A stretch of 64,000 nt of DNA from Mytilus californianus (Eukaryota): the NCBI RefSeq assembly GCF_021869535.1, contig NW_026262712.1, forward strand, positions 79,608,001-79,672,000, read 5' to 3'. Every line of letters begins with the position of its first letter. Position 1 is the first letter of the stretch. The notes below the pieces were generated by a model. The model ran no database searches, was not told where the DNA came from, and was given only the letters and a program-made list of their open reading frames with translations. The position numbers were made by a program, and so were the translations under genes. Shown piece after piece: positions 3,847-46,925 of this stretch.

Positions 3847-6423
3847 ATGATACGGCCGTTATATATATTGGTTCTTACATTCGGAATACTTTACAGGTCT
3901 GCTTCAATAATTAAAAGGTATAATGGATTTAAACCGTGCGAGTTCTATCAGAGATGTGAGTGTAAAAGAGACCAGAGATCATCGCTTTACTTTGCAGATT
4001 GTTCAGGACTAAATATGACACAAATAAGGAGATTTCCGAATGTACTGTTAAAACTATCGCTACGAATAAATAGATTGGAAGTGATTAAAGATGGTATCTT
4101 TTTGGAAAACACACTTCTGAGATCGTTGGATCTTTCATTCAATAGAATCAAAACAATTTCATCATCTTCTTTCATTGGGTTAGAAAATTTGAAAGAACTC
4201 GACCTTCAACAAAACAACCTGAATAAGAAAAGTTTTACACATCAATGGTTTGCCAGTTTTAAAAGCTTGGTTTATTTAAATTTGAAGGAAAACTTTTATG
4301 ATGAATATCAACCAGACATATCATCTTTGGTGCGATTGGAAACTTTGAAAATGGATTTTGTGTATAATAAAACAACAATACTGAGTAAACAGTTTAGAAA
4401 TCTCAAACGCCTGAAGCTTCTGGATTTTTCTGGGTTTACAGGACATTGTTCAGTACCAGTTTTAACACCACATGCATTCCAGAATGTACCACATGTTCGA
4501 CATTTAAATTTGTCTATGTGCAAAATAAAATCAGTACAGATAGGGTCGTTTAATACAATGAAAAATATTACCTCCCTCGATTTATCAGGAAATACATGCT
4601 TAAAATTTCAGGTATTAGAAAACGTAACAGCCGACATTCAGTTTTCCGCAATCAAGATTTTAAAAGTTAACAAAATCCATAAAGTCTTTGATATGAATAC
4701 ATATTTGCATACTAATCAAATAAGGCATCTGAAAAACACATCCATACAAGAACTTCATATGGATAGCAATCGTCTGCAGCAAGTAGAACCTGGTGCTTTG
4801 AGATTTCTCCCCACAACATTGATCTATCTATCAGTAAGAGACAACATGTTTTCCTTAGGACCATACCTGAATGACTTGTTGGCCTTATCAGTAGAAACTG
4901 TAGATGCATCCGGCATGAATTCATTCCACAAGGAAGATAGACACCCTGAAACATGCAACTTAGACCTTGTGTGTACTTGGCACACTGATGTTAGACTTGA
5001 TGAATATTCGGATCCTCAATTTAACCATTTGTGGTTTCGAAGTGGAAAAAATGAACAGGGGAATTTTAGAAGAACGGTCATCCCCATACCTTACAACCTT
5101 ACGAAATTAAATTACCGTTCTTGTGGCTCACAATATAACATAACGGAAGTAGAGCTATCCAATAATAAGCTAGTAAGTGTTGACCTGAGCAACAATATTT
5201 TGACGCGTTGGATTGGCCCCTTAAGAAATGTAAAGAATTTGAAATACTTGGATCTATCTTCAAATATGTGCTCCAACCTTTCGACATTCTTCTTCAGTCC
5301 AGACTTCAACATATTGGAAGTTCTATCATTGAGTAATAATTTACTAGGACTTGTCTTACCGTCTGATATCCACGGAAACACATTCCAAAACTTGTTAAAT
5401 GTAATAAAACTGGATTTATCTAAAAACAAAATTTCAAAATTACCAAAACTGATTTTTAAGTCTCAGCGAAAAATGGCAGTACTAGATCTTAGTGACAATT
5501 GTATCGAAAATATTGATTTTCAAGTGTCACATTTGATAAATCTGTCATACCTAAATTTAAGAAATAACTTCATTACATTTATCGATAGTCATACGATTGT
5601 CGATATTAATTCCATAGTTGACAAAAGAAAAAATCTTGCTATCAACCTGTTGGAGAACAAACTGATATGCACATGTAGTTCCCAAAAATTTATAAATTGG
5701 ATGGGAAGTACAAGTGTACATATTGTTAATAAAACTCATTACTTTTGTCAATTATCAACAGGAGAACGTGTCCCGATGAAAAATATTCCAGAACTATTCA
5801 CAACATTAGAAAAGGAATGTACATCATATGTGGTTCTCATTTCTGGACTAGTTGTATCACTTTTATTGTTTATAATTGTTCTGATCATGGGTATTTGTTA
5901 CCGATTTCGATGGAAGCTAAGATACTTTTACTATATGGTGAAAATTAGATCTCGAAGTAAGATACCGCAAATCGACGAAGATGAAAATGAATATATGTAT
6001 GACGCCTTTGTGTCATATGCAGATGACGATCGATCATTTGTTCATACCCAGTTACTTCAAACACTGGAAAAAGAAAATGGTATTCACCTATGCTTACACA
6101 AGAGAAACTTTTTACCCGGAAATGATATAGCGACTAACGTTACTTCCGCTATTCACAATAGTCGTAAAACTATTGTCATTATGACTTACCATTATCTGAA
6201 GTCTTACTGGTGTATGTTCGAGTTTAATATGGCGAGAATGGAGAGCACCTACGAACGCAATAACGAAAATGTACTATTCCTTGTGGTCTTTGAGCAAATA
6301 TCTGCCCGTGATTTTCCTTTGCATATTTTAGAAGTCGTTCAATCCCAGTCGTACATAGAATTCCCAAACGATGAGCAAGGTGACGTAGTATTTTGGCGGC
6401 AGCTTGTTAAAGCACTGAAATAA
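3847..6423 (+). CDS. Toll-like receptor, copy 1 (type A), intact, single coding exon, 858 aa
   Basis: Hydrophobic N-terminus, Cys-capped LRRNT (CEFYQRCECK...ADCSG), many LxxLxLxxN repeats, LRRCT (NKLICTCSS...YFCQ...EC), TM segment (VVLISGLVVSLLLFIIVLIMGIC), TIR with box1 YDAFVSY, BB loop LHKRNFLPG and C-terminal FWRQL. Confidence 0.97.
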   Translation: MIRPLYILVLTFGILYRSASIIKRYNGFKPCEFYQRCECKRDQRSSLYFADCSGLNMTQIRRFPNVLLKLSLRINRLEVIKDGIFLENTLLRSLDLSFNRIKTISSSSFIGLENLKELDLQQNNLNKKSFTHQWFASFKSLVYLNLKENFYDEYQPDISSLVRLETLKMDFVYNKTTILSKQFRNLKRLKLLDFSGFTGHCSVPVLTPHAFQNVPHVRHLNLSMCKIKSVQIGSFNTMKNITSLDLSGNTCLKFQVLENVTADIQFSAIKILKVNKIHKVFDMNTYLHTNQIRHLKNTSIQELHMDSNRLQQVEPGALRFLPTTLIYLSVRDNMFSLGPYLNDLLALSVETVDASGMNSFHKEDRHPETCNLDLVCTWHTDVRLDEYSDPQFNHLWFRSGKNEQGNFRRTVIPIPYNLTKLNYRSCGSQYNITEVELSNNKLVSVDLSNNILTRWIGPLRNVKNLKYLDLSSNMCSNLSTFFFSPDFNILEVLSLSNNLLGLVLPSDIHGNTFQNLLNVIKLDLSKNKISKLPKLIFKSQRKMAVLDLSDNCIENIDFQVSHLINLSYLNLRNNFITFIDSHTIVDINSIVDKRKNLAINLLENKLICTCSSQKFINWMGSTSVHIVNKTHYFCQLSTGERVPMKNIPELFTTLEKECTSYVVLISGLVVSLLLFIIVLIMGICYRFRWKLRYFYYMVKIRSRSKIPQIDEDENEYMYDAFVSYADDDRSFVHTQLLQTLEKENGIHLCLHKRNFLPGNDIATNVTSAIHNSRKTIVIMTYHYLKSYWCMFEFNMARMESTYERNNENVLFLVVFEQISARDFPLHILEVVQSQSYIEFPNDEQGDVVFWRQLVKALK

Positions 6424-6556
6424 CATTGAAACTAAACATTTTAATATACAAGATTATTTCAAAGATGAACGCAGTTGTTAATACATACATGAATAACAGG
6501 GCCCAATCTTTGCTTTACTGTTATACAAAATGTTTAATATACATTTATATATATAT

Positions 6557-7855
6557 AGTCAGCAGGGTTAAAGAACATCCGTTGTTTGACCTGCTAGTCA
6601 AATGCGTTTTGTTAAAATATACTTTTTCACTTTTATGGTCATTTGGAAAATGTTGTTTGTGCTGTATTTAGACCCTTCTACCAAGAAAATTGTTTTGCAT
6701 GCACACGTATACAAATTGCGGTTTTTATCCAACGCAATCATAGGGTTTGAACGATGTTTTCAATTTAGACTTGTTTATATTTTTTTGTTTGAGCTTGTAT
6801 TATATTTGCCTTCGGGTTTATATGATCCGTTCATCCTATTTCGACTCTTCAAAATTCAAGTGTCTATCCTAAATTGAGGTAAAATATATGGCCTTCCAAA
6901 TACCGTTTCGATTCCTAACATCACTGAAGAAACATTAATTGTCGAAATCCGGATATGGTGTACTATTTTTGCACCTTTTGTTTGCGGTATACCATCTTTT
7001 CCGCAAGTTTATTGTTTTCTGTTTGGTATTGAATTATTAGTTAAGATCCATTTTGTTACATCTTGTGATCCGTTTATTAGGCAATCGCCAATGGCAGTCA
7101 GCAGGGTTTAAGAACATCCGTTGTTCGACCTGTTAGTCAAATGCGTTTTGTTAAAATATACTTTTTCACTCATTTGGTCTTTTGGAAAATGTTGTTTGTG
7201 CTGTATTTAGACCCCTCTACCAAGAAATTTGTTTTGCATGTACACGTATAAAATTGCGGTTTTTATCCAACGCAATCATAGGTTTGAACGGTGTTTTCAA
7301 TTTAGACTTGTTTATATTTTTTCGTTTGGGCTTGTATTATATTTGCCTTTGGGTTTATATGATCCGTTCATCCTATTTTGACTCTTTCAAAATTCAAGAG
7401 TCTATCCTAAATTGAGGTCAATTATATGGCCTTCCAAATACCGTTTCGATTCCTAACATCACTGAAGAGACATTAATTGTCGAAATCCGGATATGGTGTA
7501 CAAATTTTTGCACCTCGTGTTTGCGGTATACCATCTTTTCCGCAAGTTTTTTGTTTTCTGTTTAGTAATAATTTAATAATAAGATCTGTTTTGTTACATC
7601 TTGTGATCCGTTTATTTGGCAATCGCTAATGGCAGTCAGCAGGGTTTAAGAACATCCGTTGTTCGACCTGCTAGTCAAATGCGTTTTGTTAAAATATACT
7701 TTTTCACTCATTTGGTCTTTTGGAAAATGTTGTTTGTGCTGTATTTAGACCCCTCTACCAGAAATTTGTTTTGCATGCACACGTATAAAAATTGCGGTTT
7801 TTATCCAACGCAATCATAGGTTTGAACGTTGTTTTCAATTTAGACTTGTTTATAT
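6557..7855 (+). repeat. Tandem repeat, unit about 539 bp, about 2.4 copies
   Basis: AGTCAGCAGGGTT(A/T)AAGAACATCCGTTG starts at 6557, 7096 and 7634; units nearly identical. Confidence 0.95.
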
Positions 7856-8281
7856 ATATATACATATATAGTCATTTATTAAGCAGCAAAATTTGATGTA
7901 CAATAAGCTTTAAAATTTCTTGTCTGAATCCGATTTCACCTGGATAGATGCACGCCCGATGAAGCTAGTTTGTCATGCGAAATATTGCGTTAATTTTTTT
8001 ATCGCATTGTAAATATTTTTTAACATTTCTTAAAATGTGTGTTAAAATTACATTGCTTGGCAATTAATATATATCTATATATAAAGACAAGTCCTTCGCC
8101 CACAAATTCATTGTAAATGTTATTTTCGCTATTTTACGAAATTTTCCTTTGATCTTACTGACTGATAATTTCCTTTCTCAGCACAGTAGAGTGATATGAA
8201 AAATTATCGCTAGAAACTTAGGGTGCACGTGCTGTTGTCAATGAAATTAACAACGTCGTCATAGGTAAAATAGCGATAAAC

Positions 8282-8380
8282 AGATTATCATTGGTCATCT
8301 CAACTCGATTGCTTTTCTCACTTTCGCCGTACCGGCTCAAGCGAGAAAATCTATCTCGTTGAGATGACCAAAGATAATCT
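8282..8380. repeat. Short palindromic element
   Basis: AGATTATCATTGGTCATCTCAAC...GTTGAGATGACCAAAGATAATCT inverted arms with a GC-rich centre. Confidence 0.7.
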
Positions 8381-8699
8381 ATAAATGAAATTTGAAGAAA
8401 CAAATATGTATATAGTCAGGTAAAATGAACACACGGTGTTTAAAAGAGAGAAAAAAGACAAAGATACATCCACACTTTAGTGGATCTTTTACTTATCAGA
8501 AAGAAATAGCTATAGTAATTCATAGCTCACATGACATCTATGCACATAATAGTTGACACTGAGTAGGAGTAACGTTAACAGCAACAGTTAATAAAAAATG
8601 AAAACTAGAAATTTTTCGTTAAAAAAACCAATAACAGTCATTTGATTAAATTTGTTTGTGGTTGTAAGAGAAAGGTTCAAACCTTTATACAACGAATTA

Positions 8700-8960
8700 C
8701 TCATAGTAATCCTGATACCAGAATTTATGTTCAACAAGACGATTTTTCATTACCTATTGTCAATTTTACTTTTCTTGAGGATGATGTTCCGTTGGCTCCT
8801 TCTTATGGAGTGTAAAGTTCTCAACTTGTTCGATATTTGCGTTTTGCAGTGCTGTCTTGGATTTCAATGAATTTAATATTTTCATTATTCAAAAACTGTT
8901 ATAGCACGGATAAATATTCCGTAAATTAATCACAACTTTATATTTTCATCACAAATATAG
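8700..8960 (+). mobile_element. Degraded Penelope-like RT C-terminal fragment (duplicated at about 23600-23840)
   Basis: Reads TRIYVQQDDFSLPIVNFTFLEDDVPLAPSYGV*SSQLVRY, a decayed YDKRDDF...YGVYISQLIR motif. Confidence 0.7.
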
Positions 8961-9269
8961 GTATTTACTAGTGAAGTAGGATTTCACCAGCAGGAATGTA
9001 TTAACAAGAGGTATTTATTTACACCCTCCTATAACGATATATTATTAATGAAGCTAACAAGTGTAGGAATTAATGTCATTTTATTATTTGTCAATTTCAA
9101 AATATTCTGTTGTTTTTCAGATACTGTGTCTGATATTTCTGGGGATCAATTTTGAAGCAATTCTAAAATGTTTTTAATGGTTTTTTTTCTGCATTCTGTA
9201 TAGGCATTCTGTACATTTTTTTTGTAGGAATTACACACAATAATGTCTTCATGTACAGTTAATGAAGTA

Positions 9270-9790
9270 ACTGTATTTAATCTTCTATAAAGCACATCCA
9301 CCGATATAAGAGTGTATAATGGTATAATTGCATACGTGTAGGGTAAGTACATCGAGCTTGCTTTCAGTAACTGCGAGCGTTTCGTAAGGTATACAACCAC
9401 TAATATAGAATATTACCATAAAAGATTGGATGTGAAATATATGAATGTATAAAATGACTGCACGTTGATTTATATTTACGAATAATGTCCTTGTACCGAT
9501 GATAAAATTTAGTAAATGTTTTGACAAATGTTTGACATCGAAAACCCTGGTGTAATAATTTTTCAGTAATACATCGATTTCTTTCGTTAAAATCAAATAC
9601 GTTTTACATACACGAGCAAATCGAACAAGATGAGATATATAAACACCATAAGATGGTGACAAGGGAACGTCACCATCTAAAAATGGATAAGTAACAATAG
9701 GAAATGAAAAATCATCTCTTTCATCGTAAATTTTGGTATTAAGCTTCCCATTAAAGATATAGATATCAAGATCCAGGAAAGGGTGCATAG
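9270..9790 (-). mobile_element. Penelope-like RT C-terminal fragment (frameshifted)
   Basis: FLDLDIYIFNGKLNTKIYDERDDFSFPIVTYPFLDGDVPLSPSYGVYISHLVRFARVC, continuing after a frameshift as DFNERNRCITEKLLHQGFR...ISHPIFYGNILY. Confidence 0.8.
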
Positions 9791-11054
9791 TCCCACCTCC
9801 TCACATTTTTTCTTTCAAAGACTTATAATTAATGTGTTCATTTCTCAAATCCGTGCGAACTACAATCACAATATTTGATGTAAATATGCATTTAGGGGAG
9901 TTATAAAAGCACACCACTTCCACCCACTACCAAACACAAAATAAGTGAGTATACATCAACCTATTTTTTAACACTTCATTTATTAATATCCAGTTTTAAA
10001 TAATCATAGGTCTTCAACACAAAGCTACTAACATTCAGTTTTTACTAAAGTTAATGTTACTGCCATGCATGTATTCTGACCACTTATTTCCTTGTGATGC
10101 TAATTCATAGGGTTGCTGTTTCACTGACATATATCCACGATCTGCATAGAACGCGACTGTACCCCATACCGCATAGTAATCTTAAAGAGGCCTTGACATT
10201 ACACATGTTACATTCAATATGTGAACAACGCAAACAGAAAACAACAGCCTGATTTTGTAGCACTGTCCTTTCCTGATGAAACTGAACGATAAGTGTTCGT
10301 TCTAGTTTAAATTAGATGAATAAAAAACAATTAGGAAATCTACAATTTACGGTACAGTATAACGAAGTGCCTTTAGATATTAAGATGAACATTAAGACGA
10401 GTATCGCCACACCGTAGCTCAAATTTTTAAACCGTCTTAAGAGGTGTGGCCAATTTTTACTGATATTGTTAAACACCAGGGATTTAAAAAAAATCATATA
10501 AAACCTAGTGAAATTTATATCTAAAATAAAATTTACCTAAACAATGATACTATTTCCGCGTGATCAACGTGTGCCACTTGCATAAATGTAACCTTCATTC
10601 TGCACACTCTAGACCAAAATTTAAACACTAAAAACGAATATTGTTTGAGAAAGATTTTATAAATATAATAAGAGGCTTGCATTTTCGTTTAACTCCGCTA
10701 TTTACTAGAAGATGCCATCCTGTCACTTAATAATTCACAGTTTGGTGACTTTATTGAAAAAATCTATCTTATCGAAATTAAAATAAAGGATACCACAGAT
10801 GCATATGGTGGCCGGTTAATGCCATTTCGCGTTTTTGCGTTTTCGCCCTTCATATTCTATAGGGCGAAAACGAAAACGCGAAAACGCGAAGTCAAAAACG
10901 CAAAAATGCGAAGTCGAAAACGCGAAATCGGAAAGAAAAAATATTTCGCGTACAAAATAGATGATATAATCTTTCAAATTGTGAACTTTTCATTTATATG
11001 TAGCAGTGCCTGCATCTAAATTATACACACCTGGTTGATATGATATATTAGAGC

Positions 11055-11305
11055 TTGGGTTTCCTATCATGAGTCCTTTGAAAGTGAGTTGCTGCTTACA
11101 AGGAAGCCATTTAACCAAGGGTTCTGAATCAGAAAGTTGAAGCCATCTCTTCCGAATCAAACTTTACGGACGCCATCACGAGTTAATTGACCATTGTGTT
11201 TTGTAGACTGTTGATTATTTTTTCGTTTTTTGCCATGAAGTAATCAGTTTGCTTTCGACTTATGAGTTTGAATACCCCTTTGGTATCTTTCGCCTCTCGT
11301 TTAGA
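11055..11305 (+). mobile_element. Penelope-like 3' fragment, internally deleted
   Basis: Reverse-complement match to the 26998-27447 family (CTTACAAGGAAGC...TTTACGGACGCCATCACGAG...CCCTTTGGTATCTTTCGCCTCTC). Confidence 0.65.
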
Positions 11306-13477
11306 TCAAATTATATAAATCCATTAATTGCCTTTAATTTGGCATCAAAGGACACTACGGTCCAAATTATGTTTATCTATTTAGATTGATTGTATCATGA
11401 TTGAAATGCAGTTGCAAATACTTCACTTATATTCTATAGGGCGAAAACAAACTAACAACTATTTCAACGGGTAGGTTCTGAACGGTAGATAGAACGTTAC
11501 GGCATGTGGTCGGGAAATTAGAAGTGTATGGGAATAAACTTTGCTAATAAGTTAGCTCTTAAGTTCATGGCATGATTACAGATGTGAATTGATATGCATT
11601 AACAATGGCCGAAAGAACATCATAGATAAACACATGTACATAAAAACATACATATTAGTACAATAATTTGTAACATGTGTAATCAATCCTCAAATGAAAA
11701 TTGCCAAACACAAATATCATTAACATTTCATCCAAATATGCTAATCGAGGAAAGGGTAGAGAGGCAATACATTCTCCCACAAAATTATCTTATAACAAAA
11801 GAGAGCTACCACGACAGTGATTCCAGTCCGATATAAAATATATCTACTTCTGGCTTACCCCCCTAAAAAGCAAAGAAAAATTAGCTGCTACTTTAGACAA
11901 AGATTTCCGTAAACATTGCAGAAGTTTGGAAATTCAAAAGAAACTAAGGTTTCAAATCCCTCAGATCTTAGATGGTTTGGGCTATTTTTAAGTCCTTTTT
12001 AGGTTTATATAGCTCTTTAATTGTGTTGGCTCTTATGTATCATTGGCTTTCAAACACTCGCCTTTGATCGAAATTTTTTGAGTGTTGTTTTAATCTTTTT
12101 CGTGACAATTATCCAAAAACTAAGATTTTTTCATCTGAATAAAAGTGTTACATGTGGTTAAAACATTACATGTAGCTTTCATAACGCATATACTGATTAG
12201 GTTATTAGTAACTTTTCTGTGATGTCAGGGAGAATAATAGCTTTTTTTAAACAGAGATACATTAAAGTTGAGTCGTTTATTTATTTATGAATATACAATT
12301 TTACTACATATAATCACAATAATAGAAAGTCACATGAACTATTGTTTTAATTAACTACTCAAAACACTAACGTGATCATAAGGATAAGTTCTGATGACTT
12401 GAAATAATGACGGTTCATTCCTGCTATTCGATCATTAAAAAAACCAGTTGTGTCATACACACCTTTATATGTTTCATTCAAACAAAAAATACATAGTTAT
12501 AAAGTTTTATCAATATATTGATACTTATAACGAGGAAAATCAATAATTAATATTTCTTTTATTATTTTTTGCTCGATGTTTGTGACGTAAAACGTATGGA
12601 ATGCCGTAATTGGAAGAATTAATATTGAAAAGTTTTGTTCGCTGATTACAATCGAATAATTAGATATTAACACGAACAAATATGCAAATTGTACATCCTG
12701 TAATTGAAAAGTCGTATGTTGAATTATATTTTTTTATTCATTTACATGTTGAAATGCAGGGAATAGATTGTACCAATGTTGTTTTTTTCTTTTTTGAAGT
12801 AATATATTGAACACAATATAACAGATGTTCAATAGACAATAAATGTGCTTCCCAGGCATGTTCTTCAAATATTTCATAAGATGTTTCTCGTGTGATAGTA
12901 ATTTTGAATGTTTAAAAAATTTGAACGAGTTGAATAAACAACGATTGAAATATATATTTTTGTATATGTTGATATGGTGGCTAATACATAGATCGACGTT
13001 GAATATGTTAAATACTTTTGCTACAATGCAAATATTCACATGCATGTAAGAATAGATTGACACATACATTGTTTGTTTTCTAATTTAAATCATGGATCAA
13101 CTCAGCTATCCAACAATTTATCTTTTATAAAATACCCTCCTCCCCCACAAACACATACATAAAAATACAAACACACACAAAATGAACGGTGGATCTTCAA
13201 GTTTAAAGACTTTATTGTCATTAATGTCATTAACCTAATAAAAATTGAAATAGATTATTCTGTTTATTTTGCAACTGCGGCATCTACAAATATTTATTAT
13301 AAAAAAATCTAACTACTCTTAGCAAATATGCAAATGTTTTAGTTACGCCTCAATCAAGCCAAAACACGTAACTTGAGCACATTGACGAAGACTTTGTGAT
13401 TGCTCTGTGTGTTCAAATGAGAATTTAATGCTGAAGAAAAATTAAGGTTTTATTTCAATGACAATTTACTGAGACAA

Positions 13478-33275: not shown

Positions 33276-33685
33276 CAGGTTGGGGACAACCCATCAAATG
33301 GGGAGCTATTCCCCAAGTGAGTAACAATACCTAATTTGAGTAATCATTTGGTAGTGCTAAAAAACAAAATTTTCTTAACTCAGTCTTTTTACTTAAAATG
33401 GCACATATTCATGAAAACTACAGAAAATTTTCCAGTAGATGAATACCCCTATCTTGATTTACTGAGAAGTTACAAGCCTATGAAAACTTCGAAAAATTGA
33501 CTATTTTCAAGGCTACAAACTTTTTAAAAACCCATAATAAAAATATAGTTTTTTGTTGTGCTATTTTAAGTAAAAAGGCCAATTTTAAGAAAATTTAGTT
33601 TTTAGCACTATCAAATGATTACTCAAATGAGGGATTGTTACTCATTTGGGGAATAGTTCCCCATTTTTGGGTTGTCCCCAACCTG
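33276..33685. mobile_element. Foldback MITE, CAGG...CCTG termini, 5-bp TSD TTCAT
   Basis: About 130-bp TIRs (CAGGTTGGGGACAACCC...); TTCAT at 33271-33275 and 33686-33690. Confidence 0.85.
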
Positions 33686-34263: not shown

Positions 34264-34829
34264 GGTTCATCATAACCTTTTGGATAATATGGCCGTATTT
34301 ACAACACAAATTTTACTCTGAGTACAGACAAACCTGTGCACCTGGAAAAGTTTTAAGGCATGACAGGAACTAGATAATTTAATTTTAAATGCATTTTTAT
34401 GTTTCAGAAAATTATAAAGTTTTCTGGATTTTGCTATTATTTTTTTTTTCATTCCTGCAGAAGGTGCCAAAATAAACTAAGTTGGGAAAAAGGTTTGAGA
34501 AGCTCCCCTCATATAATACATGTTGTGAGTAGTATTGATTGAAATGGACAATAGAAGGACAATACACATCTGCAAACTGTGTAACGGAGTGTACCGTATC
34601 AAATGAAACTCATGTGTTTGTTTATTTTGCTCTTCTCTGCAGACTGGAAAAAAATGCACATCAAAATCCAGGTAAGTTTTTAATTTTCTGAAACATAGAC
34701 TACATATAACTTTTATATATCTAGGTCCTGCCATGCCTTAAAACTTTCCTAGGTATATCAGTTGTCTGTACTCATAGTAGATTTTGTGATGTAAACACGG
34801 CCATATTTTTCAATTCCTAATGATGAACC
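34264..34829. mobile_element. MITE with about 165-bp TIRs, GG...CC termini and TTAA TSD (Kolobok-type)
   Basis: TTAA at 34260-34263 and 34830-34833; arms 34264-34432 and 34663-34829 are reverse complements. Confidence 0.8.
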
Positions 34830-36862
34830 TTAATAATAAATAAAAATCCATTACACATTAGATACAAGAGAACTATATTACCCATATAAACAATTTATTA
34901 TTCTTCTTTAAAATGCATGTCTCCAAGGCAAGTCAAAATTTCTGACAATTTTTTTTGCCACAAAGGCAATTGTAAAAAATTACCACCTAGGTCTATTAAG
35001 AAGCCACCAAGGTCTTAAAGCCACCGAGGCTAGTATTTTCCATTTAATGTTGCCGCCAAGGCAAATGTAAGTTAAAGTTATAGAATATAATTACTTTGCC
35101 GACAACACGTGGAGCACGACCGTCCCACAGCTTGGATGTTGAAAGAATGAGGACGTATCACATGTACTTCCGCCAAACATATCAACCAATGAGGTTATGG
35201 CGGGATTACACATGACTGTTTAAATAGCCGATTACAATCCAATAATTAAATATTAATACGAACAAATATGCAAATTGTACATCCTCCAATTGAAGGGTCG
35301 TATGTTTAGTTATATTTTTTCTATTTATTTATATGTTGAGATGCAGAGAATAGATTGTACCAATGTTGTTGTTTGTTTGTTTTTCTTTTTTCTTTTTTCG
35401 AAGTAATGTATTTAACAAAATATTACAGATGTTCTATAGACAATAAATGTACATTCCAAGACATGTTCTGCAAACATTTCATAAGATGTGTCTTGTGTGA
35501 AAGTAATTTTGTATGTTTTTAGAATTTGGACGAGTTGAATAAACAACGATGAAAACTATATTTTTGTATATAACGAAATGGTGGGTAATACATAGACCGA
35601 CGTTGAATATGTTAAATACGTTTGCTATAATGCAAATATTCACATGCATGCAAGATTGATACATACACTGTTTGTTTTCTGAAATTAGAATCATGGATTT
35701 AGTCTGCTATCCACTATTTATCTATGATACCCTCCTCCCCCACATACTCATACACAAAAATACAAACACACTCACAAAATAAACGGTAGATTTTAAAATT
35801 TAAATACTTTATTGTCATTAATGTCATTAATCTATAAAACATTAAAGTAGATTGTTTTGTGTATTCTACAACTACGGCACATACAAATGATTTGTTTCAG
35901 ATAAATCATACTCATCTTAGTGAATATTAAATGTTTAAGTTACGCCTCAATTGAACCAAGCCATGTAACTTTGAGATCATAGTCGAAGACTTTGTGATTT
36001 CGCTGTGTGTTCAAATGACAATTTAATGCTTTCAAGCGCTTTCAATCAATCAATCAACAATTTGCTGCTGTGTAAAATTTGGTATATTGTCATTTGATAT
36101 ATTATTTATTCGTATATCTTTAATGACTTTTGATTATGTGTAACATTCTACTACATTGTATGCAATTTGTGTAGTGCTTTATGTGCATAATATGCCAATA
36201 ATGCTATGAAATCATAAAAAAAACATGTTTTACCTAGACTTACCTGGGTTAATAAAAAAATTTATTAATGAAGTGTTGTTACACTATAACCTATCAATAG
36301 CCCATTGCTTACGCAATAATTCTATTACCTCCGACATGAATTTATTAATACCAGTAAAATTCAAAATGTTGGAATAGTCAGAATAAGCCATTTACCTGTA
36401 TATTAATTAGATCAAAATTACTTATACAACAACTTAACTTACAACAACATTTACTTTTCTCTGTAGAAAATAGAGAAGGAATGTGTATTTATAAAATGCA
36501 GCAATAGCAGGCAGACATCATTATCAAAAATGTAAATAGCTGTAAATTTAAAGGAATTTCAATACAATCATAAGGTATTTGATATTTCTCTTTCCGTTAT
36601 TTATTGACGTTAAATTAATGACAAGGAAATAACGAAGTAAAAGTTTAAGTATTGCATCACAATCTTAATATCACTTGTAGTGACAACACTTATTTCATAT
36701 TTTCAAAGAGTGGACATTTGAATACACATGTGATTTAAATGACAGCATTTAATTTGGAGATTGAAGTAACTTTCTGATAACTCTATACGATATCCCCGTC
36801 ACTTTTTCTTCACCAAAGTCAACGTTGAGAAATCTAGTTAATACTTTATATATTGCATCGCC

Positions 36863-39424
36863 ATGATACGGTCGTTATATGTACTATTTCGTACATTCGG
36901 ATCACTTTGTAAGTCAGAATCAACAATTAAAATGCATACAGGATTTAAATCATGCGAGTTCTATCATATATGTGAGTGTAAAAGAGACCAAGGATCATCG
37001 CTTTACATTGCAGATTGTTCAGGACTAAATATAACAGAAATATGGAGGTTTCCGAATATAATTTCAAAACTATCGCTACGAATGAATAGATTGGAGGTGA
37101 TTAAAGATAGTATCTTTTTTAAAAACAGACTTCTGAGAACATTGAATCTTTCATTCAATAGAATCAAAACAATTTCATCATCTTCTTTCATCGGGTTAGA
37201 AAAGTTGAAAGAACTCGACCTTCAACAAAACAATTTGAGTAAGATTAGTTTTACACACCAATGGTGTGCCAGGTTACAAAACTTGGTCTATTTAAATTTG
37301 AAAGGAAATTTTTATGATGAATATCAACCAGACATATCATTTTTAGTGCAATTGGAAATTTTGAAAATGGATTTTGTGTATGAAAAAACAACAATACTGA
37401 ATAAAAAGTTCAGTAATCTCAAACGGCTAAAGAGTCTGGATTTTTCTGGGTTAACAGGACATTGTTCAGTGCCATTTTTAACACCACATACATTCAAAAA
37501 TGTACCACACGTTCGAAATTTAAGTTTGGCTATGTGCAAAATAAAATCCTTGCAGAGAGGAACTTTTGATATGATGAAAAATATTACCTTCCTTGATTTA
37601 TCAGGAAATACATGCCTAAAATTTCAGGTGTTAGAAAACGTAACAGCAGACCTTCAGTTTTCCGCAATCAAAATTTTAAAAGTCAACAAAATCCATAAAG
37701 TCTTCGACATGAATACATATTTGCAGACTACTCATATACGGCATCTCAGTAACACATCAATCCAAGAAGTTCATATGGACAGTAACCGTCTTCAGCAAGT
37801 AGAACTGGGTGCTTTGAAATTTTTACCCAGGACATTGATCTATTTGTCAGTAAAAGACAATATGTTTTCCATAGTACCATACCTGTTTGACTTACTTACG
37901 TTGTCATTAGAAACTGTAGATGCATCCGGCATGTTTTCATTTCACACGGAAGATCGACATCCTGAAAAATGCAACTTAGATCTTGTGTGTACTTGGCACA
38001 CTGATGTAAGATATAATGACTTTCATGATTCTAAATTTAAACAATTGTTGTTTAAACAGGGTGAATTTGGTGGAACGCTCATACCCATACCTTACAAATT
38101 TAAGAAATTAATTTTCAGGTCTAGTGGATATAAATATAACATAACGGAAGTAGACTTATCAAATAATGAATTAGAAATGGTTGACCTGAGCAACAATATT
38201 TTGACACGTTGGATTGGCCCCTTTAACAATGCAAGGAATTTGACATACTTAGATCTTTCTTCAAATATGTGCTCGAATATTTTGACATTCTTCTTCAGTC
38301 CAGACTTCATCATGTTGAAAGAGCTGTCATTGAGTAATAATTTACTAGGACTGGCTTTACCATATGATATCCACGGAAACACATTCCAACACTTGTTTAA
38401 TGTAATGAAACTTGATTTATCTCAAAACAGAATATCAAAATTACCTAAACTGATTTTTAAGTCTCAAAGCAAAATGGAAATTCTGGATCTGAGTGACAAT
38501 TTTATCGAAAATATTGACTTTCAATTATCACATTTGATAAAGCTGTCATACCTAAATTTAAGAAATAATTTTATAACATTTATCGATAGTCATACTATTG
38601 TCGAGATTAATTGTTTAGATGACAAGAGGAACAACCTGTCTATAAACATGTTGGAGAACAAACTGGTATGCACATGTAATTCCAAACGTTTTATAGATTG
38701 GGTGGGAAGTACAAGTGTTCATATTGTTCATAAAAATCATTATTAATGTCAATTATCAACAGGAAAACGTGTCCTCATGAAAAATATTCCTGACCTCTAC
38801 AAAAAATTGGAGAAAGATTGTACATCTTATGAAGTTCTTACTTATGGACTAGTTGTAACAATTTTATTTTTTTTAATTGTTCTTATCATGGGTGTTTGTT
38901 ACCGATTTCGATGGAAGCTAAGGTATTTGTATTATATGGTCAAAATAAGATCTCGAAGTAAGATACAACAAATCGACGAAAATAAAAATGAATATATGTA
39001 TGACGCCTTTGTGTCTTATGCAGATGACGATCGATCATTTGTTCATACACAGTTACTTCAAACACTGGAAAAAGAAAATGGTATTCGCCTATGCTTACAC
39101 AAGAGAAACTTTTTGCCCGGAAATGATATAACGACTAACATTACTTCCGCTATTCACAATAGTCGAAAAACTATTGTCACTATGACTTACCATTACCTAA
39201 AGTCTTACTGGTGTATGTTCGAGTTTAATATGGCGAGAATGTAGAGCATTTACGAACGCAATAACGAAAATGTACTTTTCCTTGTGGTCTTTGAGCAAAT
39301 ATCTCCTCGTGATTTTCCTTTGCATATTTTAGAAGTCGTTCAATCCCAATCGTACATAGAATTCCCAAACGATGAGCAAGGTGACGTAGTATTTTGGGAG
39401 CAGCTTGTTACTGCATTGGAATAA
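36863..39424 (+). pseudogene. Toll-like receptor copy 4 (type B'): two in-frame nonsense codons, no frameshift; first ORF encodes a 627-aa ectodomain
   Basis: Colinear with copy 2. TAA at 38744-38746 (copy 2 has TTT) and TAG at 39242-39244 (GAG in the other copies). ATG to ancestral stop is 2562 bp = 854 codons in one frame. Confidence 0.93.
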
Positions 39425-41811
39425 CATTGTAGCGAAACATTTTAAAATATTTGATTTGTGTAAAAGAGTGAAAAAGCCTAAGATCCATCCACTTTCTGAT
39501 AAATCATTTTATTTATCGGAGGGAAACAGGTACAGAAAGTTATCTCTCATCTACAATCCACGCATAGAATAGCGCGAACAGAGTAGTAGTACTGTTTGTC
39601 ATTGACAGCAACATTTAATCAAATTTTGAAAATTATTTGTAAATGATAAATAAAAACAAATCATTTGATTTGATTTGTTGTAGTTATGAATTGTGAGTCT
39701 GTGACCATCGTGATTAACCCTATTAATTCTATTTGCCAATTATAAGACAATCTTAAATGCAAAAGATTAATTTCATATATGCTACTATCAGTTTGTTCGT
39801 AAGCTTCAAAATATCTGCAGACTTAGTTCTTAAAAATATTTTATTATATTTCATGTTTAATCACTACAAACAAACGAAACAATAGTGCTGTTCGATATCA
39901 AAAGAGAGGTTTGTTAAACTAAACGCCATTGATCATCTAGCTTGTATGAATGTTTAATTAAACGTGTTGGCCTTCCTATTGTTTGTGTCAAATATATTAC
40001 TTTCTTATGATACGACATACATTGTGAATTGTCAAGTGTGAATTTTATAACGGAATTTTATTCAAATAGGAATGACTTTTATGAATTAGATGTAAGCTTC
40101 TCATATCTGAGTGGTGTTAGCCCCGAAGATATGAGACGATTACATCTAATTTACATAGAAGTATAAATAAATATTTTATTGTTCTTAAAAGAGCAATTAG
40201 TTTTGATAAAACAGGAAAAGTGTCATTATCTTAAATTTTCCAGATGCAGTAACACTTTAAGAAGATGTTATGTAGTTATGATTTGGAATGCGATCTTAAT
40301 TGTCTCTTTTTTGCTGTCATCAAATTGATACCTAATCACTGCTTTTGTTATGTTTGTAAAGCAATATGAATCGCTGTACTATCTTGTCTTTTTCCTGGTT
40401 TATAGCCAAAATGTTAACTTTTTGATGGTAAATGATAACACTTCTATGTAAGTATTTGATACATCTATGAGCGCATTAGTCCGAAGTGGTGTATCTTATT
40501 TACACCAAGATATTATTGTCATTGCAGAATTATAGTTTTCAATAATTAAGGAGGGGTCTTGCAGCGATTTGACCATGTGTTGTTGATAAGCATGATATAT
40601 GCAGGATATCCAAATTCATTTAACGACATTATATAACGTGTTGTTTTTCATTTTTTGGTGTAAATGAAAATGCAAGCAATAATTGTTAAATGTTTGAAAT
40701 CGTATATATGCTCTTTTAACTATTTGCTGAACAGTGCAAACATCTGTAAATAACATCCAGAGGAAATGGTTTGTAAATTATCAGTAGAATCCTAATCTTT
40801 ATGAAATAGAACCATTTCCTTTTCAATTTTTCATGACAACCATGGATTGTTTGTGCTGTAAATATGCACAAGGTAATTAAATAAGTAGGGAAGTATACAG
40901 GTATTTCATAGGAAAAACATATTTTGCTAATACTACCCCCATAAAAAATGCATATCCCACTCACCGATAAACTTTACGTCCTGCTCAGTTAGTAGCAGTG
41001 ATAACTATGGAGAAAGATAAATAAAGAAAAGGATAATTGGACGATTTCACCTTTAAAAAGTTTAATCTTGATATTGTGAAACTTCGTAATATCTATATCA
41101 ATAGTCTCCATACATGTACTTTAAATCTACAAAAGTGTTATTTTTATGTTTCAACAATCAATACTGATAAGATTGACAGAAAAATAATCAAAATTAATTA
41201 CAATATTTTGACAGCCAAATATATCACTCATCTCATTAAACATCTGCATTTTTCCCCATTTATTGGGGAAGTTTGTATGTCTAATATATATGTACGAGTA
41301 AATACGTTAACATGGGGCACACAAACCATTGTTTGTGTATTGCAGTTATTTTCAAAATAAAGTGAAAGAAAAGTTAACTGACACGCGTCACCAGCTGATT
41401 TTATCGATTAAATATGATGCAAAATGTACAATAACAGACTTTCTAATACGAAGTAAAACTGAATTGCGAAATAAGAATAAATCGATTTGATCGTATGTCA
41501 CTCGAAATCAGTGCCCTATTAAGTCGAATAAAACACAGCCCCAACCGGACGCTTTCCCTTACGTGTACCATGTTTTTAAATATATTTTGTAGCAAAATTT
41601 ATATTTTGGTTTAGTACTTAATTTACCGAGGGACATTAGCTACACGAAGCTTAACCGAAACTTTCAGTTATTAAATTTGATAAATGATCTATTAAATATA
41701 TTCATTGTATATACGAATATTTAATCTTGCTTACAAAACTACAAAACAGACGATCAAGAAACCAACGGCCCAACTTTCCGTTCGAAGTGATGTTGTACAC
41801 ATTTACAATCT

Positions 41812-42225
41812 TCAGTATCGGATATGGCCTCCGTTGTTCCATTTGACAGCTTCTGCCCTTGATTGCATTAATTGACAAAGGCTTTTGACTGTTCGCGAGC
41901 TTTGTTTTGCCATTTCAATTGTAATGCGACATCAAGTTCATCAGGTGTAGCAGGCACAATCTGCCAAAGTCATTCCACATGTGTTCAATGGGATTAAAGT
42001 TTGTTGAAAATGCTGGCAATTCAAGTATGTTCACTCAGTTAACATTCAGAAAACTAGGTACACGGTACACTGTTTTAGTATTTATTGCTCTGCCATACAC
42101 TGTTGTTATATTTATTGCTCTGCCATGGCGTCAATTAATTTGGTTTGTGGTTGACGTCACTGATGAGAATAGATTCTGCAAATGCCGTAGACGGTTTTTA
42201 TTTTGTTGGCGTGGCGTGGTACAAA
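41812..42225 (-). mobile_element. Tc1-family transposase remnant, internally deleted
   Basis: ILELPAFSTNFNPIEHMWNDFGR (decayed WPxxSPDLNPIExxW), ...SRAEAVKWNNGGHIRY* (Tc1 C-terminus), and upstream TTPRQ...RLRHLQNLF (DNA-binding region). Confidence 0.7.
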
Positions 42226-44349
42226 AATGTAACTTGCAGTTGGCCTTGCATTAGGGTTTTTTTTCGCAGTTCCTGTTAATATGCAGCGTTGAAATTAACG
42301 ACTTATTGTGAAGTTGATAACATTAAAACGTCTATAGCAACAACACATTGACTCCAACCTGACTGTAATATTTCAATAGCGTGATTGGGATTTTCATCGT
42401 TGAGTAGCTGCGTTGGGAATCCACAAACGTTTATTTGATTTAAAAAAGGTCACGAATGCAACACATGCTCCCTTCACTTCACTTTACAAGACTTGCTCAG
42501 GTTAGTAAATTATTAAGTTTTACTCTCCAGGAGGATGTACGCCTGGTATAAATAACCAAAAAAATCCTTTTTATATTATTGTTGAAATAAAAAACCAAGA
42601 AAAGGTGTTTCATATCTAAAGTCAATCAGTATATTAATGACAAGATATCTTTTTGGTAGTTTCTGATGTTTCGTTCTAAATGTAAGTTTGATGCCTTATT
42701 GCCAATACAAAATTCAAATTTGTAAACACATTTATCAGACAAACTTATGTCTTATGAACATCTGAAGGATGTGATTTGGTAGATTTAGTATGGTAATCCA
42801 TTTTCAAATTCAAGTGACCAAAACAGTAGCCTTATCATACCTTCTTCTTTGCTTTAACCAATTGTCGTGAAATTGTAACAAACCATTAGGATTGATTTCG
42901 ATATCGGCGATTTCATTTTTTTTATTCTAGAGTTATGACACTTAATTCATTGACAATTTTAAATTGTAAAACGCGTTCTACTACTCTCTTTGGTTTTTTT
43001 TTAGCAATGGTGTTGTCATTTATGAGTTTGGATGTCCCTTTGGTATCTTTCGACTCTCTTTTGTTGTGATACTTTTTCCTGAAATTTTATCACAGGGCTA
43101 GAATTGATCAAAATTAGCTCCCTTTTAATATTCACGATTTTCACATTTGTCATTTTTGAGAGTCGAGCGAATTTATCCATAAAAAAATCGACATATCACC
43201 CAATCACTCCAAGGTGCTTGTACTGATTTCTTCAAAACTTTAAATTGTCACAGAAAAGAGGCGAATGCTACAAAATACACATTTAAACTCAGATGTTGAA
43301 AACAACCTGACAACGTAATGGCACAAAACTGAATTCGATCAAAGGACAAAAAACAGTGTGAAATTAACTGCCAGATGTAAATAGATGTGTTCACATATTG
43401 TTCCATGGCTTGAATATGCTTTGACCGATTTATTTAAAGCTTTACACGATAGTTGAAATTGGTAAAGATGAATATTTTTTAATTTGAATTTCGTTTATTC
43501 ATTAAAAGTTGACAATTACCGTCAGATTTAAGATAATTATTTTACCTATAATGCACTACAGTACTGTAGGTCCAGTATACTTGCAAATTACTAAAACTTT
43601 ACACTTTTCTTATAATTGGTGAATGCATGATTGCTTTTTATTGTGAACTTTTTCGGGTTTGTCGTTTCAGCGTTTATTGACTTTTAACAGTTTTTTTTAC
43701 ACCAAAGTGTTAACTAACATCTGATATTCAACTACATATTTGTTGTGCAACAACTTCAACACGCAGAGGAAGATCGTAATATTCGTAAAGTAAGGATGAA
43801 AAGTATCAACTTTAAACACAAAAAAACACTTCTTACAAATACGTTTATTTACTTATTAAAATAATATTTTCTAGTATATACAATCACAATAAAGGGGAGT
43901 CAGATATCTTGTTTTTTTCTTCACCTAATTACTCAAAACACTTGCATGGTTGCATCTACACAAGAAAGACGTTCTAAAGAATTTAAAAAAGATGACACAT
44001 ATGAAAAGCAAGGGAAAATTTTACATGTAATATGAATAGCTGTGAATGTTATGGGACAATGTTACATATGTTTGAGATATATATCTTCTTAAGTGAAACA
44101 AATGACAAGGAAGTAAATAGGTAAATGTTTAAGTATTGTTTTCCAACACAAAGCGTCTTTTGAAATCATAAACTTAGAAAAACTTAAAGAGCGACAACGT
44201 TGGATATACACGTGTTAAAGAACAAAACATTTAGGACGTGAAGTTGTTATTTGTAAAATCCAATTGTTGTTATTACTGGTAATTCATCTACGTTTAGATG
44301 TTCTTCATTTTAAGAAGAAATAATAACGAATATCATTGAATAATTGAGC

Positions 44350-46925
44350 ATGATGCTGTCGTTATATATACTATTTCTAGTATTCGGAATACCTTGTATG
44401 TCAGCTACAACAATTAAAAGTCATAAAGGCTTTACACCATGTGAATTCTATCATAGATGTCAGTGTAAAAAAGACAAGGAATCATCGCTTTATAATGCAG
44501 ATTGTTCAGGGCTAAACATGACGCAAATACGGAGGTTTCCGAATATAATTGTGAAACTAACACTGCGAATGAATAGTTTGAACGAGGTAAAAGACGGTAT
44601 ATTTTTGGAAAACAGACTTCTGAGAACGTTGGATCTTTCCTTCAATAGAATAAACACACTTTCGCCATCATCTTTCATTGGATTAGAACAGTTGAAAGAA
44701 CTCGACCTTCAACAAAATAGTCTCAGTAGGAAAAGTCTAATATACAATGTGTTGCCATTTTCAAAAGCTTGGTTTATTTGAATTTGAAAGGAAACTTTTA
44801 TCAAGAATTTCAACCTAATATATCCTCCTTAGTGCGTTTGAAAACGTTGAAAATGGATTTTGCATATACGGAGACAACTGTTCTAGGTAAACAGTTCAGT
44901 AATCTGAAATGGTTGATGCGTCTAGATTTTTCTGGGTTTACAGGAAATTGTTCAATAATACATTTGACACCACAGACATTTCAGTATGTACTACAAATTC
45001 GTCATTTAAATTTATCTATGTGCAAAATAAAATCAGTGCAGAAAGGTACATTTGATAAAATGAAAAACATTACCTCCCTTGATTTATCAGCAAATACATG
45101 TTTAAAATTTCAAGTCTTAGAAAATGTTACGATCGATCTTCAGTTTTCAGCAGTTAAAATTCTAAAATTGAACAAAATCCATAAGGTTTTTGATATGAAC
45201 ACATATTTACAGACATCTCATATCAGATATCTGAACAACACGGCCATCCAAGAATTTCATTTGGACAGCAACCGTCTGCAGCAAAAAGAATCTGGTGCTC
45301 TGAAATATTTCCCCAAAACATTGAAATATGTAGCAACAAGAGATAACATGTTTTCCATAGGACCGTACCTGTATGACCTAATGTCCATGTCAATAGAAAT
45401 TTTTGACATTTCCGATATGTTTAAAGCTCACAAGGAAGATCGTCACCCCGAAACATGCAACATGAACTTTGTATGTACCTGGCACAGAGAGGCTCAATTT
45501 AATGAAAATCAGAATATTCAGGTAAAAGAATTGTTGTTTAAAAGTGCACAATATCACCAAGAGGACAATGCTGTTACCATCATACCTATACCCTATAGAC
45601 TAAAAACATTGCGTTTTCGATCTAGTGACGCAAAATATACGATAACGGCACTAACTTTATCCAATAATAAACTAGAACGTATTGATGCGAGCAACAATAT
45701 TTTGTCTCACTTGATTGGGCCTTTAAAAAATACAAAGAATTTGAAATACTTAAACCTATCTTCAAATGTGTGCTCCAACATTTCGACATTCTTCTTTAGC
45801 CCCGACTTCAACATATTAGAGGACCTACTGTTGGGAAATAATTTGTTAGGTCTTGTGTTACCGTCCGATACCCACGGACAAATATTCCAAAATTTGATCA
45901 ATTTAAAAAAACTTGATTTATCTGAAAACAGGATTTCTATTTTGCCTAATCAGATTTTCAAATCGCAGAGAAAGCTTGAAATGTTAGATCTTAGTTCTAA
46001 CTTTTTAGAAAAAATCGATTTCAAATTATCACATTTGACTCATCTGTCATACCTAAATTTAAGAAATAACCTTATTACATTAATCGATAGTCATACGATT
46101 CTGGAGATTAATTTTATAGCTGATATGAGAAAAAATCTTTCTATGAACCTGTTAGAAAACAGACTGGTATGCACATGTAGCTCTGAGCGTTTTATCAAAT
46201 GGATTGGAAGTACAAGTGTGAAACTTTTTAACAAAAATCATACCTTTTGTCAATTATCAACTGGAGAACGTATCCTCATGACAAACATCCAAGAAATTTA
46301 CAAAAGTTTAAAAAAAGATTGTACATCCTATGAAGTACTTATTTCTGGACTAGTTGTAACAATTCTTTTATTTTTCATTGTTCTTATCCTGGGTATTAGC
46401 TACCGATTTCGATGGAAACTAAGATACTTTTACTATATGGTGAAAATTCGATCTCGAAGTAAGATACCGCAAATTGACGAAAATGAAAATGAATATATGT
46501 ATGACACCTTTGTGTCTTATGCAGATGAAGATCGATCATTTGTTCATACACAGTTACTTCAGACACTGGAAAACAAAAATGGTATTCGTCTGTGCTTACA
46601 CAAGAGAAACTTTTTACCCGGAAATGATATAGCGACTAACATTACTTCCGCCATTCACAATAGTCGTAAAACTATTGTCATTATGACTTACCATTATCTG
46701 AAGTCTTACTGGTGTATGTTCGAATTTAATATGGCGAGAATGGAGAGCATCTACGAACGCAATAACGAAAATGTACTTTTCCTTGTGTTTTTTGAGCAAA
46801 TATCTGCTCGTGATTTTCCTTTGCATATTTTAGAAGTCGTTCAATCCCAATCGTACATAGAATTCCCAAACGACGAGCAAGGTGACGTAGTATTTTGGCG
46901 GCAGCTTGTTACTGCACTGAAATAA
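44350..46925 (+). pseudogene. Toll-like receptor copy 5 (type C) with one 1-bp frameshift (recent pseudogene, null allele or assembly error)
   Basis: ORF 44350-44781 (SP, LRRNT, first LRRs) and ORF 44769-46925 (rest through TIR) join if one T is restored at GTG-TT-GCC (44752-44753); copy 3 reads GTG TTT at this site. Confidence 0.85.

What the first reader, a model, noticed from the sequence alone, without database searches (positions are those of the whole stretch)
6400..46925. TLR array reads A-B-(C/A)-B'-C: a single unequal crossover with the junction in the last codons of copy 3
Seen: copy 3's promoter and body match copy 5, while its last codons and 3' flank match copy 1 (GTTAAAxCACTGAAATAACATTGAAACTAAACATTTTAATATACAAG; copy 5 has GTTACTGCACTGAAATAATTTTTG). 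Copy 3 still carries non-A TIR variants up to about 23155 (AACGACG, TCCCAATCG) and switches to A-type by about 23195. The spacers after copies 1 and 3 are colinear, as are those after copies 2 and 4. Inference: misalignment of C with A in an ancestral A-B-C array, using the near-identical TIR ends as the crossover substrate, produced a duplication of about 17-24 kb and a chimeric gene. This is a readable record of how a TLR cluster grows.
Basis: partly seen in the sequence, partly recalled or inferred. Interest (0 to 1): 0.7.

Follow-up and report, generated by a model that had tools for sequence, protein, structure and literature searches.

The report
Old crossover-built mussel TLR gene array
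Five Toll-like receptor genes in a row in the California mussel did grow from three by an unequal crossover that left a hybrid, now dead, middle copy, but the event is old, shared with a sister species, and was followed by at least one more block swap, so it is a good worked example of a known process and not a new one.

Summary
The window (Mytilus californianus) carries five intronless TLR copies. Region 8.4-23.25 kb is colinear with 23.29-46.97 kb. Copy 3 has a C-type promoter and body, then an A-type 3' flank that runs into a second copy of the A-B spacer.

A breakpoint test puts the switch at 23158|23196 (0 of 2000 shuffles). Type-diagnostic sites only bound it to 23074-23196, or 22815-23197 on the strictest reading.

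M. coruscus has the same C/A junction and five copies. M. edulis and M. galloprovincialis have the predicted three-gene A-B-C array between the same flanking genes. Unitigs from four other individuals carry the copy-3 flank joined to X'. It is therefore not an assembly artefact.

Copy 3 is a pseudogene (ten frameshifts, seven stops). Two frameshifts are shared with M. coruscus, so it died before the species split.

"A single crossover" is too simple. From upstream of copy 4 (onset 36.0-36.4 kb) to about 630 bp into copy 5, unit 2 belongs to a lineage closer to the edulis complex. M. coruscus carries a unit-1-type block at that position.

The scan has already reported old chimeric TLRs in two other arrays of this genome.

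The parts
3847..6423 (+). Copy 1 (type A), intact 858-aa TLR
   Evidence: ORF. Pfam LRR_8 and TIR. 92% identical to the M. coruscus A locus.
6424..6490 (+). A-type 3' flank, the stretch that copy 3 also carries
   Evidence: Also present behind A of M. edulis and M. galloprovincialis.
6491..8384 (.). Block behind copy 1 that is absent behind copy 3; holds two 540-bp repeats (6557-7855)
   Evidence: Self-BLAST. Partly present behind M. edulis A. Absent behind M. coruscus A.
8385..13432 (.). Spacer X (A to B), colinear with X'
   Evidence: HSPs 8385-9167, 9784-10706, 11718-12131 and 12641-13432, with JC distance 0.12-0.21 to X'.
14570..17128 (+). Copy 2 (type B, alpha lineage), intact 852 aa
   Evidence: Sister to M. 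coruscus B (100% support).
17129..20663 (.). Spacer Y and the copy-3 promoter (alpha lineage)
   Evidence: Colinear with 39425-44349. Long private branch of 0.12-0.21. The promoter is 94-97% identical to the promoter of the last gene of M. coruscus.
20664..23209 (+). Copy 3, the C/A chimera, a pseudogene
   Evidence: Ten frameshifting indels (plus two in-frame ones) and seven in-frame stops. The 1-bp deletion at 22044 and the 2-bp insertion at 22188 are shared with M. coruscus.
23074..23196 (+). Interval that holds the C-to-A exchange point (22815-23197 on fixed diagnostic sites only)
   Evidence: The last C-lineage shared derived site is about 23074, and the last fixed C-type site is 22815. 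The first A-type sites are 23196-23197.
23288..27860 (.). Spacer X', the second copy of X; 24047-25913 is extra and holds a high-copy repeat (24674-25174)
   Evidence: M. coruscus L026 19403-21801 matches 22713-24597 at 90-94%. Repeat depth.
27861..35226 (.). Unit-2-only 7.4-kb block with inverted 670-bp arms
   Evidence: No counterpart in unit 1 or in other species.
36863..39424 (+). Copy 4 (type B, beta lineage), with premature stops at 38744 and 39242
   Evidence: Groups with edulis-complex B (95-100% support).
36000..44976 (.). Beta block: copy-4 promoter, copy 4, Y', copy-5 promoter and about the first 630 bp of copy 5. The left edge is soft: asymmetry sets in somewhere between 36.0 and 36.4 kb.
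   Evidence: Three-point distances, trees, and the right-hand break at 44975|44978.
44350..46925 (+). Copy 5 (type C), open apart from a 1-bp deletion at 44751
   Evidence: Its 3' flank is C-type and is shared with edulis-complex C.
50198..57006 (-). Aldehyde dehydrogenase gene that bounds the array in all species
   Evidence: Matches to the Aldedh-bearing stretches of L027 and L030.

Best explanation
In an ancestor of M. californianus and M. coruscus, a three-gene array (adh_short - A - X - B - Y - C - Z - Aldedh) misaligned so that C paired with A. Recombination took place inside the roughly 400-bp TIR-coding 3' end, where the two types have no fixed differences. This non-allelic homologous recombination (unequal crossover) gave A - X - B - Y - C/A - X' - B' - Y' - C.

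The hybrid third copy acquired disabling frameshifts before the two species split and has decayed since.

The array did not then simply age. At least one further exchange moved a block of about 9 kb, running from the B' promoter into the first 630 bp or so of the last gene. As a result, M. californianus unit 2 now carries a 'beta' lineage that is nearest to the edulis-complex genes, while M. coruscus unit 2 carries an 'alpha' lineage like unit 1.

Shown: the architecture, the junction interval, its presence in a second species, the three-gene arrays in two other species, the pseudogene state, and the non-sisterhood of the two species' unit-2 blocks.

Inferred: the recombination mechanism, and the order and direction of the later exchange(s).
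For: - Colinear units.
- In-register switch with no indel apart from copy-3-private 1-bp deletions.
- Chi-square 121.7, reached by 0 of 2000 shuffles.
- A-type and C-type flanks are each conserved behind A and C of M. edulis and M. galloprovincialis, so both predate the event.
- M. coruscus contig CACVKT020004972.1 reads A-X-B-Y-C/A-X' and then B'-Y'-C-Z-Aldedh.
- (calCA, corCA) has 100% support, and the two share two frameshifts.
- M. edulis and M. galloprovincialis read adh_short-A-B-C-Aldedh.
- The junction sequence is unique in the genome, and the five copies are the whole clade.
- Unitigs of four other individuals from two studies bridge the A-type flank into X'.
- For the later exchange: the (calB2, corB2) clade is rejected (p = 0.013 and 6e-6); ((calB, corB), corB2) has 100% support; (calU1, corU1, corU2) has 100% support for Bdown+Y; (calU1, corU2) has 98% support for the C promoter; corC is a mosaic with chi-square 185.7, reached by 0 of 2000 shuffles.
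- X/X' branches are equal at 0.06 each, whereas from the B promoter to the C promoter unit 1 has 0.12-0.21 against unit 2's 0.02-0.06.
Against: - No single listed unitig spans 23012-23199, because the TIR is shared by the paralogues. Linkage across the exchange interval in M. californianus therefore rests on the assembly and on the M. coruscus contig.
- The M. coruscus evidence comes from one older long-read assembly, and 7.9 kb of its X' was not seen.
- Rooted site patterns for B conflict: 10/20/5 with the A outgroup and 34/24/12 with the C outgroup. The C tree is an unresolved three-way split. 'All four cal/cor B copies form one clade' is not rejected (p = 0.063).
- In spacer Y, unit 1 of M. 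californianus is nearer to M. coruscus unit 2 than to M. coruscus unit 1. One extra exchange does not fully explain this.
- c1 and c3 differ at only 2 of 82 bp after the junction, against 11-12% in X. This hints at later conversion at the junction itself.
Confidence: 0.7

Rival explanations
1. One reading: one unequal crossover between identical A-B-C templates, and everything since is point decay and transposon insertion.
For: The architecture and junction fit. Unit-to-unit distances are of one order, JC 0.105-0.21.
Against: It predicts ((calB, corB), (calB2, corB2)). The (calB2, corB2) clade is rejected. It predicts equal unit-1 and unit-2 branches everywhere, but that holds only in X. It does not predict the mosaic last gene of M. 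coruscus.
Confidence: 0.1
2. The five-copy array is older than the split from the M. edulis complex. Unit 1 (alpha) and unit 2 (beta) are ancient paralogues. The edulis complex lost unit 1 by the reverse crossover. X/X' and the A and C/A 3' ends were later homogenised, and M. coruscus overwrote its beta block with alpha.
For: Copy 4 groups with edulis-complex B at 95-100% support. The clade (calB, corB, calB2) is rejected at p = 0.013. Spacers of unit 2 are far nearer to the edulis complex than those of unit 1.
Against: X and X' are mutually closer (0.117) than either is to edulis-complex X (0.23-0.26), with equal branches. The C coding region shows no deep split. The model needs three extra events. 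Holding all four B copies of M. californianus and M. coruscus (calB, corB, corB2, calB2) together as one clade is not rejected (p = 0.063).
Confidence: 0.13
3. Copy 3 was a plain duplicate of C, and its 3' end was later overwritten by gene conversion from copy 1. No crossover was involved.
For: Small conversion patches do exist in the TIR. For example, near 22860 corCA and calC share 'CA' while calCA has the 'AG' of the other types. c1 and c3 are 97.6% identical just after the switch.
Against: The A-type sequence does not return to C-type. It continues into at least 4.5 kb colinear with the A-B spacer, and then into B'. A conversion tract should be bounded on both sides.
Confidence: 0.04
4. 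Assembly artefact: two haplotypes of a three-gene array joined head to tail.
For: Mussel genomes are highly heterozygous. No listed unitig spans 23012-23199.
Against: The same junction is present in M. coruscus. The A-type flank to X' join is seen in four other individuals. The units differ by 10-27% and by kilobase-scale indels. The join lies in register inside a gene. No second copy exists elsewhere in the assembly.
Confidence: 0.02

Closest known systems
Tandem-array growth by unequal crossing-over (non-allelic homologous recombination) giving a hybrid gene at the junction. Classical cases are haemoglobin Lepore/anti-Lepore and the red/green opsin arrays (from general knowledge).
   Same: Misaligned paralogues. 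The exchange lies in register inside the most conserved stretch. The result is a hybrid copy, duplication of everything between the partners, and a flank switch at the junction.
   Different: Here the product is fixed, or at least common, in two species. The hybrid is a long-dead pseudogene, and the partners were only about 80% identical outside the TIR.
Species-specific tandem duplication of TLRs in Mytilus (Saco et al. 2023, PMC10279657).
   Same: That paper reports that orthologous TLR positions in M. edulis and M. coruscus often hold different numbers of tandem paralogues. This locus (3 against 5) is one such case.
   Different: The words 'unequal', 'chimer' and 'pseudogen' do not occur in that paper's main text, so it gives no junction-level reconstruction. 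The present locus adds the breakpoint, the dead hybrid and the later block swap.
Earlier scan findings s1-342914 and s1-342916: old chimeric TLRs in other arrays of the same genome.
   Same: Hybrid TLR paralogues that arose before Mytilus species diverged and are pseudogenes in M. californianus.
   Different: Those are at other loci (one 32.8 Mb away on this chromosome, the other on another piece of the genome). They concern ectodomain/TIR or promoter/ectodomain fusions and are not tied to a whole-unit duplication.

Membership tests
Toll-like receptor (single-exon LRR-TM-TIR type) | LRR ectodomain plus a C-terminal TIR domain in one open reading frame | tested here: met
   For copies 1 and 2, Pfam gives LRR_8 at E = 2e-36 and 5e-37, and TIR at 6e-18 and 3e-18. 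Public sources name the relatives 'toll-like receptor 4' in Mytilus.
Toll-like receptor (single-exon LRR-TM-TIR type) | Intact reading frame in every array member | tested here: not met
   Copy 3 has ten frameshifts and seven stops. Copy 4 has two stops. Copy 5 has one 1-bp deletion.
NAHR / unequal-crossover tandem duplication | Two colinear direct units | tested here: met
   8385-23254 against 23288-46971.
NAHR / unequal-crossover tandem duplication | Hybrid copy at the unit boundary, with the switch in register inside paralogous sequence | tested here: met
   Chi-square 121.7, reached by 0 of 2000 shuffles. No indel at the switch.
NAHR / unequal-crossover tandem duplication | Flank behind the hybrid equals the flank of the 3' partner and continues into its spacer | tested here: met
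   The A-type flank, then X', colinear with X for at least 4.5 kb.
NAHR / unequal-crossover tandem duplication | Unduplicated arrangement in relatives at the orthologous place | tested here: met
   adh_short-A-B-C-Aldedh in M. edulis and M. galloprovincialis. Whether that state is ancestral or a secondary loss is not settled.
NAHR / unequal-crossover tandem duplication | Single event: uniform, symmetric divergence of the two units, with positional counterparts as sisters across species | tested here: not met
NAHR / unequal-crossover tandem duplication | Reciprocal deletion product (a single A/C hybrid) | tested here: inconclusive
   Not seen in the five species' assemblies examined. No population data were searched.
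Gene conversion patch | Donor-type tract bounded on both sides by recipient-type sequence | tested here: not met
   There is no return to the C-type flank after the switch.

The most novel reading that the evidence does not exclude
The alpha and beta blocks (B promoter to the C 5' end) are long-lived haplotype lineages of this TLR locus, older than the split between M. californianus/M. coruscus and the M. edulis complex. They are kept in populations and are shuffled between array positions by repeated unequal and equal crossovers. On this reading the array is a store of old receptor alleles placed in tandem, and M. californianus unit 2 was captured from a three-gene beta haplotype.
Probability: 0.3. 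Interest if true: 0.55.

Novelty: new member of a known kind. Interest (0 to 1): 0.35.

Why it matters
It gives a base-level, cross-species checked example of how a bivalve TLR cluster gains copies. The exchange lies in the conserved TIR end, the hybrid copy dies early, and later block swaps blur the record.

It also warns that positional counterparts in such arrays need not be orthologues. That matters for TLR gene counts, orthology tables and selection scans in mussels.

The process itself is textbook, and tandem TLR duplication in Mytilus is already published.

Tried and rejected
- Three-point clock arguments to date the duplication against the edulis split. The edulis-complex branches are about 2.5 times longer in all three gene clades, so clock reasoning is unsafe.
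- Outgroup-polarised site patterns for B and C. The counts conflict.
- AU tests on C. All three resolutions are allowed.
- A first multi-species alignment that kept the 1.46-kb M. coruscus insertion in place. It misaligned, so I redid it with that private insertion left out of the row. The two private insertions in M. coruscus B' were likewise left out, for alignment only.
- A global MAFFT run of the 9-kb blocks timed out and was redone with a faster setting, so that alignment is rough in the spacers.
- Tandem Repeats Finder did not report the 540-bp repeat behind copy 1, because the period exceeds its limit.
- I could not fetch 7.9 kb of M. coruscus X', because no gene is called there.
- The M. 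trossulus second B copy was tested as a possible relic of the same duplication and rejected. It is sister to troB1 (89/93 support).
- Absolute dates were not attempted.
Full report
**What is in the window.** The window has no N runs and is 32% G+C. It lies on a 120,330,192-base contig.

There are five intronless TLR copies on the + strand:
- Copy 1 (3847-6423) and copy 2 (14570-17128) are open and carry LRR_8 and TIR.
- Copy 3 (20664-23209) has ten frameshifting indels and seven in-frame stops.
- Copy 4 (36863-39424) has stops at 38744 and 39242.
- Copy 5 (about 44350-46925) has one 1-bp deletion at 44751.

The five copies are a closed clade. The next paralogue in the genome is 52% identical in protein.

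**The observation.** Self-BLAST shows 8385-23254 colinear with 23288-46971. The array therefore reads A, then two units of spacer X, B, spacer Y, C.
- Copy 3 matches copy 5 at 67-82% in the promoter and 87-96% in the body. It matches copy 1 at 45-60% and 57-81% over the same parts.
- After the stop codon the pattern reverses: 94% to copy 1 and 56-79% to copy 5.
- A maximum chi-square test on the triplet gives 121.7, with the break between 23158 and 23196. No shuffle out of 2000 reached it.

**Where the exchange lies.** I used the orthologues to polarise the sites.
- A and C have no fixed difference between 22815 and 23197. All copies are 89-97% alike there. That stretch is the likely substrate for the recombination.
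- One derived site shared by copy 3 and copy 5, at about 23074, narrows the interval to 23074-23196.
At 23135 the G is private to A of M. californianus and M. coruscus. Site 23158 is homoplastic.
- So "last codons" is only the 3' bound. The exchange lies somewhere in the last 45 codons, or 130 on the strict reading.

**It is real and old.**
- The junction sequence is unique in the assembly.
- Unitigs from four other individuals in two other studies cover the copy-3 body up to 23012. They also carry a piece starting at 23199 or 23221 and running to 23473-23665, with 0-1 differences. That piece joins the A-type flank to X'.
- No listed unitig crosses 23012-23199, where all the paralogues share words.
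- M. coruscus contig CACVKT020004972.1 reads A, X, B, Y, a C-type body, the same A-type flank, then X'-specific sequence. L026 19403-21801 matches window 22713-24597 at 90-94%.
- Further along the same contig come B', Y', C, Z and Aldedh. M. coruscus therefore also has five copies.
- The two C/A copies are sisters at 100% support. They share a 1-bp deletion (22044) and a 2-bp insertion (22188). The hybrid was already dead when the species split.
- The M. coruscus copy also carries a 1.46-kb hAT-like insertion.

**The predicted three-gene allele.**
- M. edulis and M. galloprovincialis read adh_short, A, B, C, Aldedh. The A-type flank follows A and the C-type flank follows C.
- The window has the same Aldedh gene from about 50.2 kb. 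The adh_short side lies about 20 kb before the window.
- M. trossulus has A and B, then C 244 kb away. It also has a second, dead B that is its own duplicate.

**Why one crossover is not the whole story.** Distances between the units range from 0.105 to 0.27.
- With the edulis complex as third taxon, X and X' have equal branches of 0.06 each.
- From the B promoter to the C promoter, unit 1 has 0.12-0.21 and unit 2 only 0.02-0.06.
- Copy 4 groups with edulis-complex B at 95-100% support. Holding copy 2, M. coruscus B and copy 4 together is rejected at p = 0.013.
- The unit-2 B' of M. coruscus groups with the unit-1 B pair at 100% support. Making it sister to copy 4 is rejected at p = 0.013 on coding sequence and 6e-6 with flank.
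- For the sequence downstream of B plus Y, the two M. coruscus units and M. californianus unit 1 form one clade at 100% support.
- The promoter of the last M. coruscus gene is only 0.04 from the promoter of copy 3.
- That last gene is a mosaic. To the left of copy-3 position 21295 (copy-5 position 44976) it matches copy 3 at 209 of 234 sites. To the right it matches copy 5 at 135 of 175 sites. Chi-square is 185.7, and no shuffle out of 2000 reached it.
- So a block from upstream of copy 4 (the asymmetry begins between 36.0 and 36.4 kb) to 44976 is of a different lineage in the two species. At least one more exchange is needed.

**What stays open.**
- Whether the duplication came before or after the split from the edulis complex is not resolved. 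Site patterns conflict, the C tree is a three-way split, and the edulis branches are about 2.5 times longer, so clock arguments fail.
- In spacer Y, unit 1 of M. californianus is nearer to M. coruscus unit 2 than to M. coruscus unit 1. This suggests more than one later exchange, or a haplotype-mosaic M. coruscus contig.
- Copy 1 and copy 3 differ at 2 of 82 bases just after the switch, while X and X' differ by 11-12%. Constraint on the 3' UTR or a later conversion could explain this.

**Comparison with what is known.** The mechanism is classical unequal crossing-over. Saco et al. 2023 (PMC10279657) already report that tandem duplication drives Mytilus TLR expansion, and that orthologous positions differ in copy number between M. 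edulis and M. coruscus. That paper's main text does not contain the words 'unequal', 'chimer' or 'pseudogen'. The scan has also reported old chimeric TLRs in two other arrays of this genome.

**Verdict.** The mechanism is supported for the junction, but the history is more complex than stated. It is an ordinary kind of event, well documented here.

Noticed in passing
L034/L032 and window 1-3270: About 18.6 kb lies directly in front of copy 1's promoter only in M. californianus. In M. coruscus, M. edulis, M. galloprovincialis and M. trossulus, the sequence that sits about 15.4 kb before the window start abuts the copy-1 promoter.
   Followed up: partly
L026 17947-19407: A 1.46-kb hAT-like element (16-bp terminal inverted repeat, 8-bp target duplication) sits inside the M. 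coruscus C/A pseudogene.
   Followed up: partly
L029 17074-19569 and L030 2-1851: M. trossulus has its own duplicate of B. The second copy is dead and lies next to C, 244 kb from the first in the assembly.
   Followed up: partly
window 44751; L035 8939-11507: Gene C is intact (857-858 aa) in the edulis complex. It carries one 1-bp deletion in M. californianus, and several frameshifts plus a stop in M. coruscus. Both species keep only A and B open. Whether the M. californianus lesion is fixed was not tested.
   Followed up: partly
A second stop follows at 39242. No public protein model was returned for this copy, and the M. coruscus counterpart is broken by insertions.
   Followed up: partly
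window 1774-2144, 27000-27419, 49013-49424: A dispersed repeat of about 420 bp, also present in the spacers of M. edulis and M. trossulus.
   Followed up: no
window 24674-25174: A very high-copy repeat (unitig depth 1e4 to 1e5) inside the X'-only insert.
   Followed up: no
window 28578-29250 and 31521-32211: Inverted 670-bp arms (87% identical) inside the unit-2-only 7.4-kb block, with no long ORF between them.
   Followed up: no
window 6557-7855: Two tandem 540-bp units (94% identical) behind copy 1. The stretch 6491-8384 has a variable counterpart behind A in other species.
   Followed up: partly
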